A program made the translations under genes and the position numbers. DNA of 64,000 nt from Camelus dromedarius (lineage: Eukaryota), in assembly GCF_036321535.1 (NCBI RefSeq), contig NC_087451.1:55738001-55802000 (forward strand), given 5' to 3'. Below are positions 17,998-23,204 of the stretch, in pieces. The notes under the pieces are model-generated. The model worked only from the letters and a program-made list of their open reading frames with translations. It searched no databases and had not been told where the DNA came from. Positions within the stretch are counted from its first letter, which is position 1; each line of letters opens with the position of its first letter.

Positions 17998-18180
17998 GGA
18001 CCAGGGGTCACAGGATCAGTGTTCCGAGACACCACCAGGGCCCTGGCAAGACAGCTGGGCTGCCTCATTTTTGCTGTCTGCTTCTGGCCCTTCTGCCTGA
18101 TCCAGAGGAAAGGGGGACCCACTATGTCAAGACCAACCTCTCCCAGCTGGATGAGCCGGAGCCAGGAATAAAGCAGCCGG
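17998..18180 (+). pseudogene. Gasdermin pseudogene, exon-2 homologue
   Basis: AG at 17996-17997. Reads (T)GSVFRDTTRALARQLG-CLIFAVCFWPFCLIQRK, frameshift at about 18112, then GTHYVKTNLSQLDEPEPGIKQP. Compare GSDMA MTMFENVTRALVRQLN...SLIDFKRFHPFCLVLRK...GARYVHTDYTLLDVLEPGSSPS. Phase-1 GT donor at 18181. Confidence 0.9.
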
Positions 18181-19353
18181 GTACCAAGAGAGCTCAGCCA
18201 CATGCCTGGTCCAGCTCGGAAGCAAAAACCTAGGAAGGCAGGCCCCAGCTTGTCACCTCCAGGCAGCACCCTGGAGCCAGCGGGCAGTGGGTAGGGGTGG
18301 GAGGAGAGGAGAGCCCCTCACTCAGCCCTTCTGCCACCAGCTTCTTCCTGCCCTCTGGAGGGAAGCTGGAGCGGTAGAGAAAGCAGATGCTGCCCTCCCT
18401 CAGGGTGCCCCAGTCTGAGGAGGAGAGATGTGACCCTAAGTCTCAGGGAACCCCCAGACTAATGGAAGAAATAGAGTCCTTTCTCTTTGGGGAGCTCTGA
18501 ACCTGGTGAGATTAAGACATCCCTCAGACAAAGACTGAAGCACCTCCAAAGCCTGGTTCTCCACCAAAGGAAATAAAGCAAGAACAAACTGAACACACAG
18601 GAGCTGAGGGAGGCAGTTAAGAGCGGCAGGTGGGGCCCAGCCCCCACCCTTCCTGTGCTGGGCTCATGTGCAGACATTGCAAGTGCCACGTGAATGAGGG
18701 GAGGTCAGCATCAAAACCGGAAGAACCCAGGCAGCTCCTTCCAAGCACTTCCCCCATTAGACTATGAGGAGTTCCAATCGGAAACAGTTTCCCCTTGTCT
18801 CTCTGGGACTCTGTCATCAGCAACCTCACCTGCCTCTGAGGAATGAGTTCCCAAACCAGGAAGGCAGAACACAAAGCAGACAGACAAAGGCGTCTGAGCT
18901 GTCAAAACAGATCCCACCACTAGTCCATGCATTCAACAAACATTTATTGAGTTACTACTACGTGCCAGAACCTGCAGATACAAAGATAAAGAAGTTGTGG
19001 AGCCCATCCTCGGGGACCTGACAGTTAGTGTATCAATGATGGCGGCCCAGAGGACAGAGGCGTGCACTGGGGCCATGTGAGCCTAGAAGGGGCATCTAAA
19101 GCAAACACTCACTAAGGTTCAGGTACTTGGTTCACAGGAGCACTTAGAACCCATTTATTTTACCCATTTTTTAAAATCTTATTTTACACTGAGTTCCAAT
19201 AATTTTGTATCTCTGGTTTCCCACATACAACAGGATAGAAGCAGTATATGTGAAGATATACAGACACACAGACAGAACAACAGCAGTAAGAAACAACAGC
19301 CTGGCAGCAGGGCGGGCCATTATTAAAAGAATTTATAAGAACTCAAAAAAGCA

Positions 19354-19489
19354 GGTGTGGTGGTATATAGCTCAGTGGTAGAACGCATGCTTGGCATGCA
19401 CAAGGTCCTGGGTTCAATCCCCAGTGCCTTCATTAAAGGAGTAAAATAAAATAAAATATTTAAAAAACCAAATCACTGTTAAAAAGAAA
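19354..19489 (+). mobile_element. tRNA-derived SINE (vic-1-like) with 14-bp TSD
   Basis: GGTATATAGCTCAGTGGTAGAACGCATGCTTGGCATGCACAAGGTCCTGGGTTCAATCCCCAG plus A-rich tail. TSD AACTCAAAAAAGCA at 19340-19353 and 19490-19503. Confidence 0.9.
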
Positions 19490-20241
19490 AACTCAAAAAA
19501 GCACACAGTAGGGCATTTTACTGTCTTCTAAATGGCCCTGTGGGGACAAATGATTCTCCTCACCTCCAGAGGGCCAATGGACATTGGCAAAATGCATAAT
19601 ACTAATGTCATGGACTTTTGACTTACCTGTAAAAAGAGGTCAAATCTTGGAGCGTCCACTCTCAGGGACAGGAAGCAGGTGATGCATTTGAGAAAGTTTC
19701 CCTCCAATCAGGGCAGAAGTTAACGATGCGGAAAGATGGTGGAGAAAAGGCTCATTCCACCTGGCCTGCCTCCTGCCTCCTTCCTCCCATGGCACCAAGG
19801 TCTGGCCTGGGGCTGTGTCGAGTAGTTCCCATCTCTCTTGCACACAACAGCCCTCTGGATGGGTGAAGACGGCTCTGGAGTCTCCAGCACAAGTCAGCAC
19901 ATCATGGTCTTTCTCTGTTCTTGTCTCTCTGTCCCTATTTAATGTCCCACAATCACCACCGCACCCACGCACTTGCCTCAGGTCCCTGGAATCCAGTTTA
20001 TCTCCATCCGGTCACAATACTCATTTCTGCACTTATGACAATTACTATCCTCCTCTTTCAGAACATTCAAAAAAAAAAAAACACCTCAAGAATGCATATT
20101 AAACTAATGTCTGAGGTCAGCCTTCAATTCTCATTCATTTAGGGAGTCACAGGCAATTTATCATGCAGAGTCAAACCATCAAGGATGGTTCCCTCAAGGG
20201 ATGTGTGGGAACAAGCATAGGGCATTGTGTCTGCCCTAAAG

Positions 20242-20380
20242 AACTGGGAAAAGACTCCGAGATCACCCAGGCTGCAGCCGTAGAGCTTCTGGTGAATATC
20301 TCCGTCACAGTCAGCAGCCAATGTCATCCTGGACATCGAAAACCTCAGCACTGCAGAAGATCTGGAAAACCTAAGAAGAG
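20242..20380 (+). pseudogene. Gasdermin pseudogene, exon-3 homologue
   Basis: Phase-1 acceptor AAG at 20239-20241. Reads ELGKDSEITQAAAVELLVNISVTVS, frameshift, then ANVILDIENLSTAEDLENLRR, versus GSDMA RNSTLEVQTLSVAPTALESLHQER. Expected donor reads GGGAGC (GT>GG) at 20381. Confidence 0.75.
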
Positions 20381-20603
20381 GGGAGCTGCAGAGTCGGGTA
20401 GGGAGGCAGGTTGAGGACTCCAGGCCAGCCAAGGGGGCTGGAACTAAGAGACATGCCCTGACCTAAAGTCGCACGGGCTGTCAGAGCTGGCAGGGATCTT
20501 CATTTTACAAAAGAGCCCAGAGAGGGATGGTGAGTTGTCCAAGGTCACACAGGGAGTCAGGGAAAAAACAGGACTAGAACCCACAGACCCCCTGTCCTTT
20601 TGA

Positions 20604-20604
<1 letters not shown>

Positions 20605-20650
<46 letters not shown>
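20605..20650. repeat. (AC)23 microsatellite
   Basis: Perfect AC dinucleotide run. Confidence 0.97.
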
Positions 20651-20652
<2 letters not shown>

Positions 20653-21550: not shown

Positions 21551-21594
21551 GGTCTGTTCCCAAAACCAGCTGGTGATCTACAGCCCCTCCACAG
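21551..21594 (+). pseudogene. Gasdermin pseudogene, internally deleted exon-5 homologue
   Basis: Strong pyrimidine tract and AG at 21549-21550; begins with a Gly codon. Ends NQLVIYSPST-g|GT (phase 1), versus GSDMA RQLMVKGKDEW-g| and GSDMD AQLVIDS. 44 nt against 97 nt in GSDMA. Confidence 0.5.
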
Positions 21595-21764
21595 GTTCCT
21601 CCCAACCCCTTCAGTGTGGCTCCCTAGTGCCTGCACCTCCCACCACTCCTCCCCGCTCAGAGACCACCCTATGTAGGCCTATGTGGTGAGGGGAGCCGGC
21701 CAGGACAGGCCAGGAAGAGTCAGGGAATCAGTGACAGCCAGTGATCCATTTCTGACCCCCACAG

Positions 21765-21812
21765 ACATCCTCCCACTCAAAGACCAGAATCTAAAAATGT
21801 CCCCCTCTGAAG
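21765..21812 (+). pseudogene. Gasdermin pseudogene, intact 48-nt exon-6 homologue
   Basis: CCCCCACAG|ACATC...TCTGAAG|GTGAGA. Phase 1-1, open frame DILPLKDQNLKMSPSE. Same length and phase as GSDMA exon 6 (DIPCIYNDNMQTFPLG). Confidence 0.85.
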
Positions 21813-22513
21813 GTGAGAGAAGCTAAAGGACTCTTCTCCCTCCCACCCCATAATGTGATGAGGGCAGTCGGACGAAGTCTTAGAAGGTGAGGACACAAAG
21901 ACACCACTCCCCCGCCTTCTCCAGCAAAGGAAAGAAACCAGCCCACTGAGGAACACAAGCCTGGAGCCCTTTCTCAAAACCATGACAGGATGGTGGGTGG
22001 GATGCAGAGGGGTCTCTCTGACTCTGACATGACGTAGTGATGCTGGGGATCCCAGCCACAGGTTTGGTTTCTTGGGCTTTTAAGTACATCCTCCCCCTGC
22101 CCCCAGCCTCCACCACACTCTTCTAGGTGTGATGAGTCTGGACCCACCCAGGGCTGCACCACGGGGCAGGCGGACCCTTCTTCCCTAGAGGCTCTCTGTC
22201 CTCCATCTCCGTCTATCACAGTCACCCTTGGTCCCTTTCGCGTCTGCAACATCCTCAACCCCATCGAAAAATACTGTTAGGAGTTGAATTCCCCTGTCAC
22301 TCCACACCAGCCCCTGCCCTGATCCTCTTTCCCTGGAGAGGGGTACCTGAGGGAGGCACAGGACACCAAGGCCCAGAAGGAGGACTCTGTGCCTGGGGTG
22401 GGGGGCCCTCTGGGTGAAGTTATGTGGAGGCAGGAGGAGCAGGGTATGGTCCTCGTTACCACTGTCCTCTACGCAAAGCTCTGGGCCTGAGCCGGTCCCC
22501 TGGGAGCCCACAG

Positions 22514-22660
22514 GGTTTCGGTAGCTGCAGGCTGAGGTGGAGGAGCTGCTGTAGCTTAAGGGCCTGACCCGGAACAGCGGACGGCGGGGCTGAGGGAAGG
22601 ATTGGCACGACTGGGCCAGGCCCTGAGGCCCAGGAGCTGTGGGACATAGCGGGGGCGGGG
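22514..22660 (+). pseudogene. Gasdermin pseudogene, exon-9 homologue (start of C-terminal domain)
   Basis: Phase-1 acceptor CCCACAG at 22513. Reads GFR*LQAEVEELL*LKGLTR, then shifted EQRTAGLREGLARLG...ELWDI. Compare GSDMA DFRTLKEEVQ...ELEDL and GSDMD DFQGLRAEVE. TAG at 22522 and 22552. The 3' end is approximate. Confidence 0.75.
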
Positions 22661-22870
22661 CTGCGGCGGAGTGGGCGGGACTGCAGGAGTCTTGGGGCGA
22701 GGTGATAGAGACTTCCGGAGCACGCTAGAGTGGTGACTGCAGTCCTGCGGGGTGAGAGGCGGGGCTTAAAACGTCTAGGGGGAGGAGTCGGGAGATGGGG
22801 CGGGGCTAAACTGGTGAGGGCTAGACCTGCGCGCCGGAGGCGGGGCTACGAGCCGTAGGAGCCAGATGCA
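22640..22870. promoter_or_regulatory. Small CpG-rich cluster of GC boxes
   Basis: GGGGCGGGGC or GAGGCGGGGC at 22652, 22756, 22797 and 22837; GGGCGGGA at 22673; many retained CpGs. Confidence 0.55.
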
Positions 22871-23050
22871 GGCTGAATGGGGCGTGACTGGCCTCCTATT
22901 CAGGGAGCTGTCATCCAGCATGTCCACTCGTCCACTCGAGGAAGGCCTCTTTACGCTAAGAGAGACTGGGCTCCTGCCCTGAGGAGGGGATCTCCCTGTC
23001 TCTCTAACCGTTGAAGTATCTAGCTGATCACTTCCCATCTCTCTGTCAAG

Positions 23051-23204
23051 TAGATGGGACCCTAGATTTTAACAAGCCATAGGTTCTGAGAGTTTCGGGG
23101 AGAGGGGCGCATGGTCTGAGTCCTCGAATGACTGCAGGAGACTTCTAGCAAACTCAATTCCATACTGACTGGGCACATCTTCTACCTGCTGGAGGCTCTG
23201 GGTG
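23051..23204 (+). pseudogene. Gasdermin pseudogene, exon-10 homologue
   Basis: Pyrimidine tract and AG at 23049-23050. Reads (V)DGTLD...*VLE*LQETSSKLNSILTGHIFYLLEALG-g|GTGAGG, versus GSDMA LEGALD...TGAILYFLGALT-g| and GSDMC ...DPILYLLEAIM. Intact phase-1 donor at 23205. Confidence 0.85.

What the first reader, a model, noticed from the sequence alone, without database searches (positions are those of the whole stretch)
17998..23204. Hidden multi-exon gasdermin pseudogene in tandem upstream of GSDMA
Seen in sequence: seven segments on the + strand translate to gasdermin-like peptides in the same order as GSDMA exons 2, 3, 4, 5, 6, 9 and 10. Examples: VFRDTTRALARQLG, FWPFCLIQRK, GTHYVKTNLSQLDEPEPG; NVILDIENLSTAEDLENL; LKKLQEHGENL/YMVTEAVKMLKEATLEVGSKIEG; QLVIYS; a 48-nt phase 1-1 exon; GFR*LQAEVE; GHIFYLLEALG|GT. 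Surviving splice junctions mostly fall in the GSDMA phases. Lesions: probable ATG>ACA at 18010, frameshifts (about 18112, 20315, 20815), stops (20906, 22522, 22552, 23117, 23129) and a GT>GG donor at 20381. Because the frames are broken, the ORF track does not reveal it. Inference: it is a dead, intron-containing extra member of the pore-forming gasdermin family at the ORMDL3-GSDMA locus.
Basis: partly seen in the sequence, partly recalled or inferred. Interest (0 to 1): 0.95.

Follow-up and report, generated by a model that had tools for sequence, protein, structure and literature searches.

The report
Ancient gasdermin pseudogene beside camelid GSDMA
Between LRRC3C and GSDMA this camelid genome carries the decayed, intron-containing remains of an old second gasdermin gene, one that is not a GSDMA copy and that still looks intact in opossum and elephant shrew.

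Summary

- **Detection.** A profile built from its closest relatives scores 43.7 and 27.0 bits on the + strand at 18-24 kb. The maximum over 1800 shuffled frames was 1.6 bits.
- **Exons.** Six of the seven proposed exons (2, 3, 4, 6, 9, 10) are orthologous, exon by exon, to an intact gene in elephant shrew. That gene lies in the same place, LRRC3C - gene - GSDMA. The proposed exon 5 ("QLVIYS") aligns to elephant-shrew intron 5 and is not an exon. Exons 11-12 are missing through a deletion of about 1.7 kb.
- **Lesions.** The start codon is lost. There are several frameshifting indels, four in-frame stops and two dead donor sites.
- **Decay.** Substitutions on this lineage look neutral (pN/pS about 0.95), against about 0.4 in elephant shrew and opossum.
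- **Relationship.** It is not a decayed copy of GSDMA (AU p = 0.0007). It belongs to a separate "gasdermin-A-like" lineage found in marsupials, elephant shrew and sirenians, which split from eutherian GSDMA before marsupials and placentals diverged (AU p = 6e-5).
- **Host.** The window is from a camelid: its LRRC3C is 98% identical to alpaca.
- **Interest.** Moderate. It is an ordinary unitary pseudogene, but it points to a little-described mammalian gasdermin lineage.

The parts
18010..18179 (+). Exon 2 relic (first coding exon). The start codon position reads ACA. It has a 27-nt in-frame deletion after 18058 and a 19-nt frameshifting deletion at 18111/18112. The donor GT at 18180 is kept.
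   Evidence: Profile hits at 18013-18114 and 18111-18191. Alignment to elephant-shrew exon 10001-10217 gives 75% nucleotide identity. The start codon is ATG in shrew and opossum, TTG in dugong and ACA here.
20241..20382 (+). Exon 3 relic. The acceptor AG is kept. It has a 39-nt in-frame deletion, a 5-nt deletion near 20333 and a 1-nt deletion near 20372. The donor reads GG instead of GT at 20383.
   Evidence: Alignment to elephant-shrew exon 13547-13730. Profile hit at 20317-20394. tblastn match of 54.5% to P0013 residues 80-101.
20770..20925 (+). Exon 4 relic. The 5' end and acceptor are blurred. It has a 4-nt insertion at 20814-20817 and a 1-nt deletion near 20893. The donor GT at 20926 is kept.
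   Evidence: Profile hits at 20770-20928 and 20819-20932. blastn identity of 77.6% to L001 14428-14579. Alignment.
21765..21812 (+). Exon 6 (linker exon), 48 nt. It is open, and both the acceptor AG and the donor GT are kept. This is the only undamaged exon.
   Evidence: The block L001 15512-15632 aligns to window 21745-21865 at 77.7% identity. Alignment with splice sites. Local score 46 against a null maximum of 26. The exon is 94% conserved between shrew and dugong.
22476..22650 (+). Exon 9 relic (start of the C-terminal domain). It has a 4-nt deletion near 22482, TAG stops at 22522 and 22552, a 3-nt deletion, and a 1-nt deletion near 22573. The donor GT is lost and reads CG.
   Evidence: Profile hit at 22459-22575. 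tblastn match of 65.5% to P0013 residues 197-225. Alignment to L001 16099-16277.
23117..23203 (+). 3' part of exon 10, with TGA stops at 23117 and 23129. The donor GT at 23204 is kept. The first 60 nt or so of the exon are not alignable.
   Evidence: Profile hit at 23120-23200. blastn identity of 75.6% to L001 17102-17259. Alignment, and 79% identity.
23281..23389 (.). Site where exons 11 and 12 (the rest of the C-terminal repressor domain) are missing. About 1.7-1.85 kb of the elephant-shrew gene has no counterpart here.
   Evidence: The collinear blastn blocks jump from L001 17259 to 19110 while the window moves only from 23281 to 23389. MAFFT places a 1733-nt gap there. The only window match to that shrew segment is the paralogous exon 11 of GSDMA at 36956-37020. 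No profile or peptide match to exons 11-12 was found in 17-28.3 kb.
21566..21583 (+). It is not an exon but lies in sequence orthologous to intron 5. The true exon 5 is no longer recognisable.
   Evidence: It aligns to L001 15337-15352, downstream of the shrew exon 5 donor at 15254. Shrew intron 5 matches window 21511-21667 with score 46 against a null maximum of 32. Shrew and opossum exon 5 score within the null.
14485..15249 (+). LRRC3C coding exon, the upstream syntenic anchor.
   Evidence: ORF found. It is 98% identical to alpaca LRRC3C and collinear with L001 6380-7336.
28311..37896 (+). Intact GSDMA, the downstream syntenic anchor. Coding exons are recognised at 28311, 28682, 32208, 33209, 33820, 35506, 36067, 36941 and 37657.
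   Evidence: tblastn with P0004. Pfam Gasdermin hit at 2.3e-28 on exon 2.

Best explanation
This is a unitary, unprocessed pseudogene: the remains of the camelid orthologue of an old mammalian gasdermin gene that databases label only 'gasdermin-A-like'.

The ancestral gene sat between LRRC3C and GSDMA. It had about nine coding exons and encoded a normal two-domain gasdermin, with an N-terminal pore-forming domain, a linker and a C-terminal repressor domain. It is still open in opossum and elephant shrew.

In the lineage leading to this camelid it lost constraint long ago. It has since accumulated a lost start codon, frameshifting indels, stop codons and dead splice donors. Exon 5 has been erased and the last two exons deleted. 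It cannot make a gasdermin, so its pore-forming function is gone.

Shown here: homology, orthology by position, the lesions, and neutral-looking substitutions. Inferred: that loss was early, and that the ancestral protein worked like other gasdermins.
For: - **Homology.** Collinear + strand profile hits score 43.7 and 27.0 bits, against a maximum of 1.6 bits in 1800 shuffled frames. There are no hits on the - strand.
- **Closest protein.** XP_006889541.1, gasdermin-A-like of Elephantulus edwardii, matches six collinear segments at 45-67% identity. This is far better than GSDMA does.
- **Synteny.** LRRC3C - gasdermin-A-like - GSDMA is the order in elephant shrew and dugong, and LRRC3C - gasdermin-A-like in opossum. 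The shrew locus aligns collinearly with the window from LRRC3C through GSDMA.
- **Lesions.** Listed exon by exon.
- **Selection.** Lineage-specific changes over 266 codons give pN/pS 0.95 for the window, 0.39 for shrew and 0.36 for opossum. Exons are 70.7% identical to shrew, against 55-70% for flanking non-coding DNA.
- **Intact orthologue.** Shrew exons 2-6 splice into a continuous 236-residue N-terminal domain, and exons 9-12 are open.
- **Tree.** The relic sits with the eutherian gasdermin-A-like genes (99/99) inside a nine-row clade (100/99).
- **Not an assembly error.** Fourteen runs of the same organism from several samples and studies, most of them DNA and seven of unrecorded type, hold 99% of the sampled words.
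Against: - No single stop-free piece reaches Pfam's Gasdermin model. A profile without the close relatives gives only 15.4 bits.
- The pN/pS counts are simple parsimony counts without correction for multiple hits, and they rest partly on poorly aligned stretches of exons 9 and 10.
- Transcription was not tested. RNA runs hold 17-78% of the sampled words of the stretch, but the one read-laying run failed. A non-coding role is therefore not excluded.
- Only one boreoeutherian genome was examined, so the date of loss is inferred, not shown.
Confidence: 0.9

Rival explanations
1. It is a decayed tandem duplicate of GSDMA itself, made within placental mammals or within this lineage, like mouse Gsdma2 and Gsdma3.
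For: It lies directly upstream of GSDMA in the same orientation, with the same exon order and splice phases. Tandem GSDMA copies exist in mouse (PMC8742441).
Against: - It has no blastn similarity to the window's GSDMA.
- It is 45-67% identical to the gasdermin-A-like protein, while GSDMA matches only exon 2 weakly.
- Forcing it with eutherian GSDMA costs 58 log-likelihood units (AU p = 0.0007).
- A duplication after the split from marsupials is rejected (AU p = 6e-5).
Confidence: 0.03
2. The protein-coding gene is dead, but the locus survives as a transcribed non-coding RNA or as a regulatory region for GSDMA.
For: RNA-seq runs hold 17-78% of the sampled words of the 5.2-kb stretch. Exon 6 and several splice sites are intact. 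Conserved blocks continue downstream towards GSDMA, with 26251-27553 aligning to L001 23853-25169.
Against: Exons are hardly better conserved than the flanking non-coding DNA, and substitutions look neutral. The RNA runs are metatranscriptomes kept as contigs, so they may hold genomic DNA or unspliced RNA. No reads could be laid.
Confidence: 0.1
3. It is a chance resemblance, or fragments of a transposon open reading frame.
For: The individual peptides are short and have no Pfam hit. The stretch contains a tRNA-derived SINE and a microsatellite.
Against: The profile scores are more than 25 bits above every shuffled or unrelated control. The hits keep strict order and strand. Orthologous exons in shrew align at the nucleotide level with their splice sites. 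The SINE and the (AC)n repeat lie in introns.
Confidence: 0.01
4. It is a still-coding, shortened gasdermin that uses another start codon and other splice sites.
For: Sirenian gene models of the orthologue use an upstream start. Exon 6 is intact.
Against: Every other recognised exon carries a frameshift or a stop. Two donors are dead, exon 5 is unrecognisable and exons 11-12 are absent. pN/pS is about 1.
Confidence: 0.02

Closest known systems
Gasdermin-A-like of Elephantulus edwardii (XP_006889541.1; locus JH947206.1, fetched as L001)
   Same: It occupies the same position between LRRC3C and GSDMA in the same orientation, and the exons are orthologous. It is the nearest protein in every search and in the tree, at 60% identity over 194 columns.
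   Different: The shrew gene is open in exons 2-6 and 9-12 and is under purifying selection, with pN/pS 0.39. The window copy is broken throughout. The database model of the shrew gene omits the first 99 nt of exon 3 and all of exon 6, although both are intact in the genome.
Marsupial 'gasdermin-A-like' genes (Monodelphis, Petaurus, Gracilinanus, Antechinus), described in the literature as a GSDMA expansion (PMC10155998)
   Same: They fall in the same clade (100/99 support). The first opossum copy lies directly downstream of LRRC3C.
   Different: They are present in several copies and are intact. Some isoforms are longer, at 660-669 residues. They are the sister group of the eutherian members.
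Sirenian 'LOW QUALITY PROTEIN: gasdermin-A-like' (Dugong dugon, Trichechus inunguis)
   Same: They are orthologues in the same position and also show decay. In dugong the start codon position reads TTG and exon 12 carries a frameshift.
   Different: The decay is much lighter and independent. All exons, including 5, 11 and 12, are still recognisable in dugong.
Eutherian GSDMA, the neighbouring gene at 28311-37896
   Same: It belongs to the same family and has the same exon order and the same two-domain plan. The two genes are tandem neighbours.
   Different: It forms a separate clade (100/100) and is only about 40% identical to gasdermin-A-like proteins. It has no nucleotide similarity to the relic and is intact here.
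Mouse Gsdma, Gsdma2 and Gsdma3 tandem triplication
   Same: These too are extra gasdermin genes between Lrrc3c and Psmd3 (PMC8742441).
   Different: The mouse copies are recent duplicates within the GSDMA clade, arising after the mouse-rat split (PMC8742441), and they are functional. The relic here belongs to a lineage older than the marsupial-placental split.

Membership tests
Gasdermin family (Pfam PF04598 Gasdermin and PF17708 Gasdermin_C) | Significant sequence homology to the N-terminal pore-forming domain | tested here: met
   Clade profile hits on exons 2, 3 and 4 (profile positions 2-192) are part of the 43.7 and 27.0 bit scores, against 1.6 bits in shuffles. Pfam's own model does not detect the single pieces. 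A general gasdermin profile detects exon 4.
Gasdermin family (Pfam PF04598 Gasdermin and PF17708 Gasdermin_C) | Homology to the C-terminal repressor domain | tested here: met
   Exons 9 and 10 match profile positions 237-276 and 324-350. Only the first part of the domain survives, because exons 11-12 are deleted.
Gasdermin family (Pfam PF04598 Gasdermin and PF17708 Gasdermin_C) | Ability to form membrane pores after cleavage in the linker | not testable with these tools
   No open reading frame remains. Activity is excluded by inference from the lesions, not by assay.
Unprocessed (unitary) pseudogene | Introns retained, and located at the ancestral position of the parent gene | tested here: met
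   Exons are spread over 5.2 kb, with introns that align to the shrew introns. Gene order is collinear from LRRC3C to GSDMA.
Unprocessed (unitary) pseudogene | Disabling lesions relative to an intact orthologue | tested here: met
   Start codon lost, at least six frameshifting indels, four in-frame stops, two dead donors, exon 5 erased and exons 11-12 deleted.
Unprocessed (unitary) pseudogene | Neutral evolution (omega about 1) | tested here: met
   pN/pS is 0.95 on the window branch, against 0.39 and 0.36 on the shrew and opossum branches, from crude parsimony counts over 266 codons.
Unprocessed (unitary) pseudogene | No intact copy of the same lineage elsewhere in the genome | not testable with these tools
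   Only this 64-kb window is available. Searches with the shrew protein found no boreoeutherian member of the lineage among annotated proteins.
Eutherian GSDMA orthologue group | Groups with eutherian GSDMA in a tree | tested here: not met
   It falls in a separate clade. Forcing it with GSDMA is rejected at AU p = 0.0007.
'Gasdermin-A-like' lineage (marsupials, elephant shrew, sirenians) | Groups inside the clade, and sits immediately downstream of LRRC3C | tested here: met
   Support is 99/99 for the eutherian four and 100/99 for the nine-row clade. Position is shown.
Orthologue of bird, reptile and caecilian GSDMA (the caspase-1-cleaved form of PMC10948149) | The gasdermin-A-like clade groups with sauropsid GSDMA | tested here: not met
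   Holding them together costs 35 log-likelihood units (AU p = 0.003).

The most novel reading that the evidence does not exclude
The 'gasdermin-A-like' genes may be a separate, unnamed member of the mammalian gasdermin family that arose before marsupials and placentals split. On this reading:
- It stays under purifying selection in marsupials and at least one afrotherian.
- It decayed independently in sirenians.
- It was lost early in the placental branch that includes camelids, leaving relics like this one.

The marsupial genes usually called GSDMA, or 'expanded GSDMA', would then be hidden paralogues of placental GSDMA rather than its orthologues. In the rooted tree the lineage groups with GSDMB and GSDMC/D rather than with GSDMA. 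A sister relation to GSDMA is not rejected, however (AU p = 0.21).
Probability: 0.55. Interest if true: 0.7.

Novelty: new member of a known kind. Interest (0 to 1): 0.5.

Why it matters
Gasdermins are the executioners of pyroptosis, and their gene history in mammals is still debated. One published study finds that mammal GSDMA is a paralogue of bird and reptile GSDMA even though both lie in the same locus (PMC10948149).

This relic shows that the LRRC3C-GSDMA interval of the placental ancestor held two gasdermin genes. One survives only in a few lineages. That has three consequences:
- It changes which genes should be treated as orthologues when marsupial, afrotherian and other mammalian 'GSDMA' are compared.
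- It gives a datable case of gasdermin loss.
- It singles out the elephant-shrew and opossum genes as untested pore-forming proteins with their own linker sequence.

For the camelid itself the finding is an ordinary dead gene with no expected function.

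Tried and rejected
- **Pfam on nine single stop-free pieces.** Only the GSDMA control hit.
- **tblastx and blastn of the stretch against the rest of the window.** These gave only SINE and microsatellite matches plus a weak exon 2 match to GSDMA.
- **Peptide searches for exons 5, 11, 12, the second half of exon 9 and the linker across 17-28.3 kb.** All scored within the null.
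- **Nucleotide search for exon 5 in its expected interval.** Within the null.
- **Orthologue of sauropsid GSDMA.** I tested whether this lineage is the true orthologue of bird and reptile GSDMA, which would have explained the 'paralogues in one locus' puzzle. It is rejected at AU p = 0.003.
- **Sister relation to eutherian GSDMA.** Neither supported nor rejected (AU p = 0.21).
- **Eutherian-type GSDMA in opossum.** Looking for one failed. One look-up found no record, and the flanks of two opossum loci hold no further gasdermin exons.
- **C-terminal tail of the shrew model.** The last 32 residues of the shrew database protein match window 26545-26640. I judged this a mispredicted exon in conserved sequence upstream of GSDMA, not part of the pseudogene.
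- **Literature.** Four full-text searches and two evolutionary papers, including the supplements of one, gave no description of this lineage outside marsupials or of a pseudogene here. The library is incomplete, so prior description cannot be excluded.

Full report
**Setting.** The window is a compact mammalian locus.
- ORMDL3 lies on the - strand at the left end.
- The LRRC3C coding exon is at 14485-15249.
- GSDMA is intact, with coding exons from 28311 to 37896.
- CSF3 and MED24 lie at the right end.
- The LRRC3C protein is 98% identical to alpaca LRRC3C, and the next best hit is 91%. The genome is therefore a camelid's.

Taken alone, the stop-free pieces give no Pfam hit, whereas GSDMA exon 2 scores 2.3e-28.

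I used GSDMA exon 2 to fetch 128 gasdermins and ran the full-length ones against the window. One protein, P0013, matched six collinear + strand segments at 45-67% identity, far better than GSDMA did.

A profile of P0013 and five relatives found seven + strand matches in strictly rising profile order and none on the - strand. Per-frame scores were 43.7 and 27.0 bits. The maximum was 1.6 bits in 1800 dinucleotide-shuffled frames, and unrelated window chunks on either strand reached at most -1.9 bits. A gasdermin profile without these relatives still gave 15.4 bits, against a shuffled maximum of 0.9. The homology is not chance.

**What is the nearest relative?** P0013 is XP_006889541.1, 'gasdermin-A-like' of the Cape elephant shrew. 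A search with it found a small group at 54-66% identity:
- Dugong and Amazonian manatee proteins, both flagged 'LOW QUALITY PROTEIN'.
- Several marsupial 'gasdermin-A-like' proteins.

True GSDMA proteins are only about 40% identical to it.

**Synteny.**
- In elephant shrew the gene lies between LRRC3C and a 445-residue GSDMA.
- The dugong arrangement is the same.
- In opossum a member of the group follows LRRC3C directly.
- The shrew locus aligns collinearly with the window at the nucleotide level from LRRC3C, through the relic, into GSDMA.

**Exon-by-exon anatomy against the shrew gene.**

| Exon | Window coordinates | State |
|---|---|---|
| 2 | 18010-18179 | ACA at the start codon position; 27-nt in-frame deletion; 19-nt frameshifting deletion; donor kept |
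| 3 | 20241-20382 | Acceptor kept; 39-nt in-frame deletion; 5-nt and 1-nt deletions; donor GG |
| 4 | about 20770-20925 | 4-nt insertion; 1-nt deletion; donor kept |
| 5 | none | No longer recognisable |
| 6 | 21765-21812 | Intact: 48 nt, open, both splice sites kept |
| 9 | about 22476-22650 | 4-nt and 1-nt deletions; two TAG stops; dead donor |
| 10 | 23117-23203 (3' part only) | Two TGA stops; donor kept |
| 11-12 | none | Absent |

- Exon 2: the start codon position is ATG in shrew and opossum and TTG in dugong.
In the corrected frame the sequence reads on to the donor.
- Exons 11-12: about 1.7 kb of the shrew gene has no counterpart between window 23281 and 23389.
- The opossum isoform P0132 joins exon 6 directly to exon 9. 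The lineage therefore probably has nine coding exons, of which six are recognisable here.

**Is it decaying neutrally?**
- Over 266 codons aligned among window, shrew and opossum, lineage-specific changes gave 33 synonymous and 93 non-synonymous on the window branch, a pN/pS of 0.95.
- The shrew branch gave 27 and 31 (0.39). The opossum branch gave 62 and 67 (0.36).
- These are crude parsimony counts, but the contrast is clear.
- Exons are 70.7% identical to shrew, hardly above the flanking non-coding DNA at 55-70%.
- The shrew gene itself is open. Exons 2-6 splice into a continuous 236-residue N-terminal domain, and exons 9-12 carry no stops.
- Dugong keeps all exons but has lost the ATG and has a frameshift in exon 12. 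That is an independent and younger decay.
- Fourteen runs of the same organism from several samples and studies, most of them DNA and seven of unrecorded type, hold 99% of the sampled words. The lesions are therefore not an assembly artefact.

**Where does the lineage belong?** I built a careful tree of 41 gasdermins rooted on skate, caecilian and fish sequences.
- The relic sits beside the shrew protein, inside a eutherian group of four (99/99) and a nine-row clade with marsupials (100/99).
- That clade is separate from eutherian GSDMA (100/100), from sauropsid GSDMA and from GSDMB.
- It joins GSDMB and the platypus/GSDMC/GSDMD group in an unresolved three-way fork (95/94).

AU tests:

| Hypothesis forced | AU p | Result |
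|---|---|---|
| Relic with eutherian GSDMA | 0.0007 | Rejected |
| Eutherian gasdermin-A-like with eutherian GSDMA, marsupials outside | 6e-5 | Rejected |
| Whole clade with sauropsid GSDMA | 0.003 | Rejected |
| Whole clade as sister of eutherian GSDMA | 0.21 | Not rejected |

- The split from GSDMA therefore predates the marsupial-placental divergence. Whether it was a tandem duplication of GSDMA or something deeper remains open.
- The tested groups were named after a first tree had been seen, which weakens the p-values somewhat.

**Comparison with the literature.**
- PMC8742441 describes conserved LRRC3C-GSDMA-PSMD3 synteny and the recent mouse triplication.
- PMC10155998 counts the opossum copies as a GSDMA expansion.
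- PMC10948149 finds mammal GSDMA paralogous to non-mammal GSDMA in the same locus, and its supplements name neither the shrew nor the opossum genes.
- None of the papers I could search describes a placental orthologue of the marsupial genes or a pseudogene in this interval.
The tests here agree.

**Verdict.** Its main interest is evolutionary: it marks a second ancestral gasdermin gene next to GSDMA.

**Untested.** I could not test transcription of the relic, its presence in other placental orders, or whether marsupials also have a eutherian-type GSDMA.

Noticed in passing
L001:13547-13730 and L001:15532-15579 (elephant shrew): The database protein XP_006889541.1 omits the first 99 nt of exon 3 and all of the 48-nt exon 6. 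Both are open in the genome, have good splice sites and are conserved in dugong and opossum. The model is probably mispredicted, and the real protein is longer.
   Followed up: partly
window 26251-27553, especially 26545-26640: This block upstream of GSDMA is 65% identical to elephant shrew L001 23853-25169. The last 32 residues of the shrew gasdermin-A-like model are translated from it and are 62% identical to the window translation. It is probably GSDMA upstream or 5' exon sequence wrongly joined to the shrew model.
   Followed up: partly
window 19347-19456, with copies near 11406-11475, 30397-30456, 31469-31577 and 37358-37417: A tRNA-derived SINE sits in intron 2 of the relic (Rfam tRNA 30.3 bits at 19366-19426). 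Several diverged copies lie elsewhere in the window.
   Followed up: partly
window 20605-20650 and 26411-26430: (AC)n microsatellites are present, 23 and 10 copies. A similar array near 29100-29170 lies in a GSDMA intron.
   Followed up: no
window 22640-22890: A stretch rich in GGGGCGGGGC-type GC boxes follows exon 9 of the relic. The aligned shrew intron also carries such boxes. It is not a tandem repeat by Tandem Repeats Finder.
   Followed up: no
window 17998-23204: Six RNA-seq runs hold 17-78% of the sampled words of the stretch. Four of them are labelled 'reproductive system metagenome'. Whether this is transcription, unspliced RNA or DNA carry-over could not be checked.
   Followed up: partly
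L004:10325 and L004:16911-17128 (dugong): The dugong orthologue reads TTG at the start codon position and has a frame change inside exon 12. This fits its 'LOW QUALITY PROTEIN' flag and suggests a separate, recent loss in sirenians.
   Followed up: partly
window 49444-49604, 51956-52095 and 53370-53501: Three runs of N lie in what should be the PSMD3 region.
   Followed up: no
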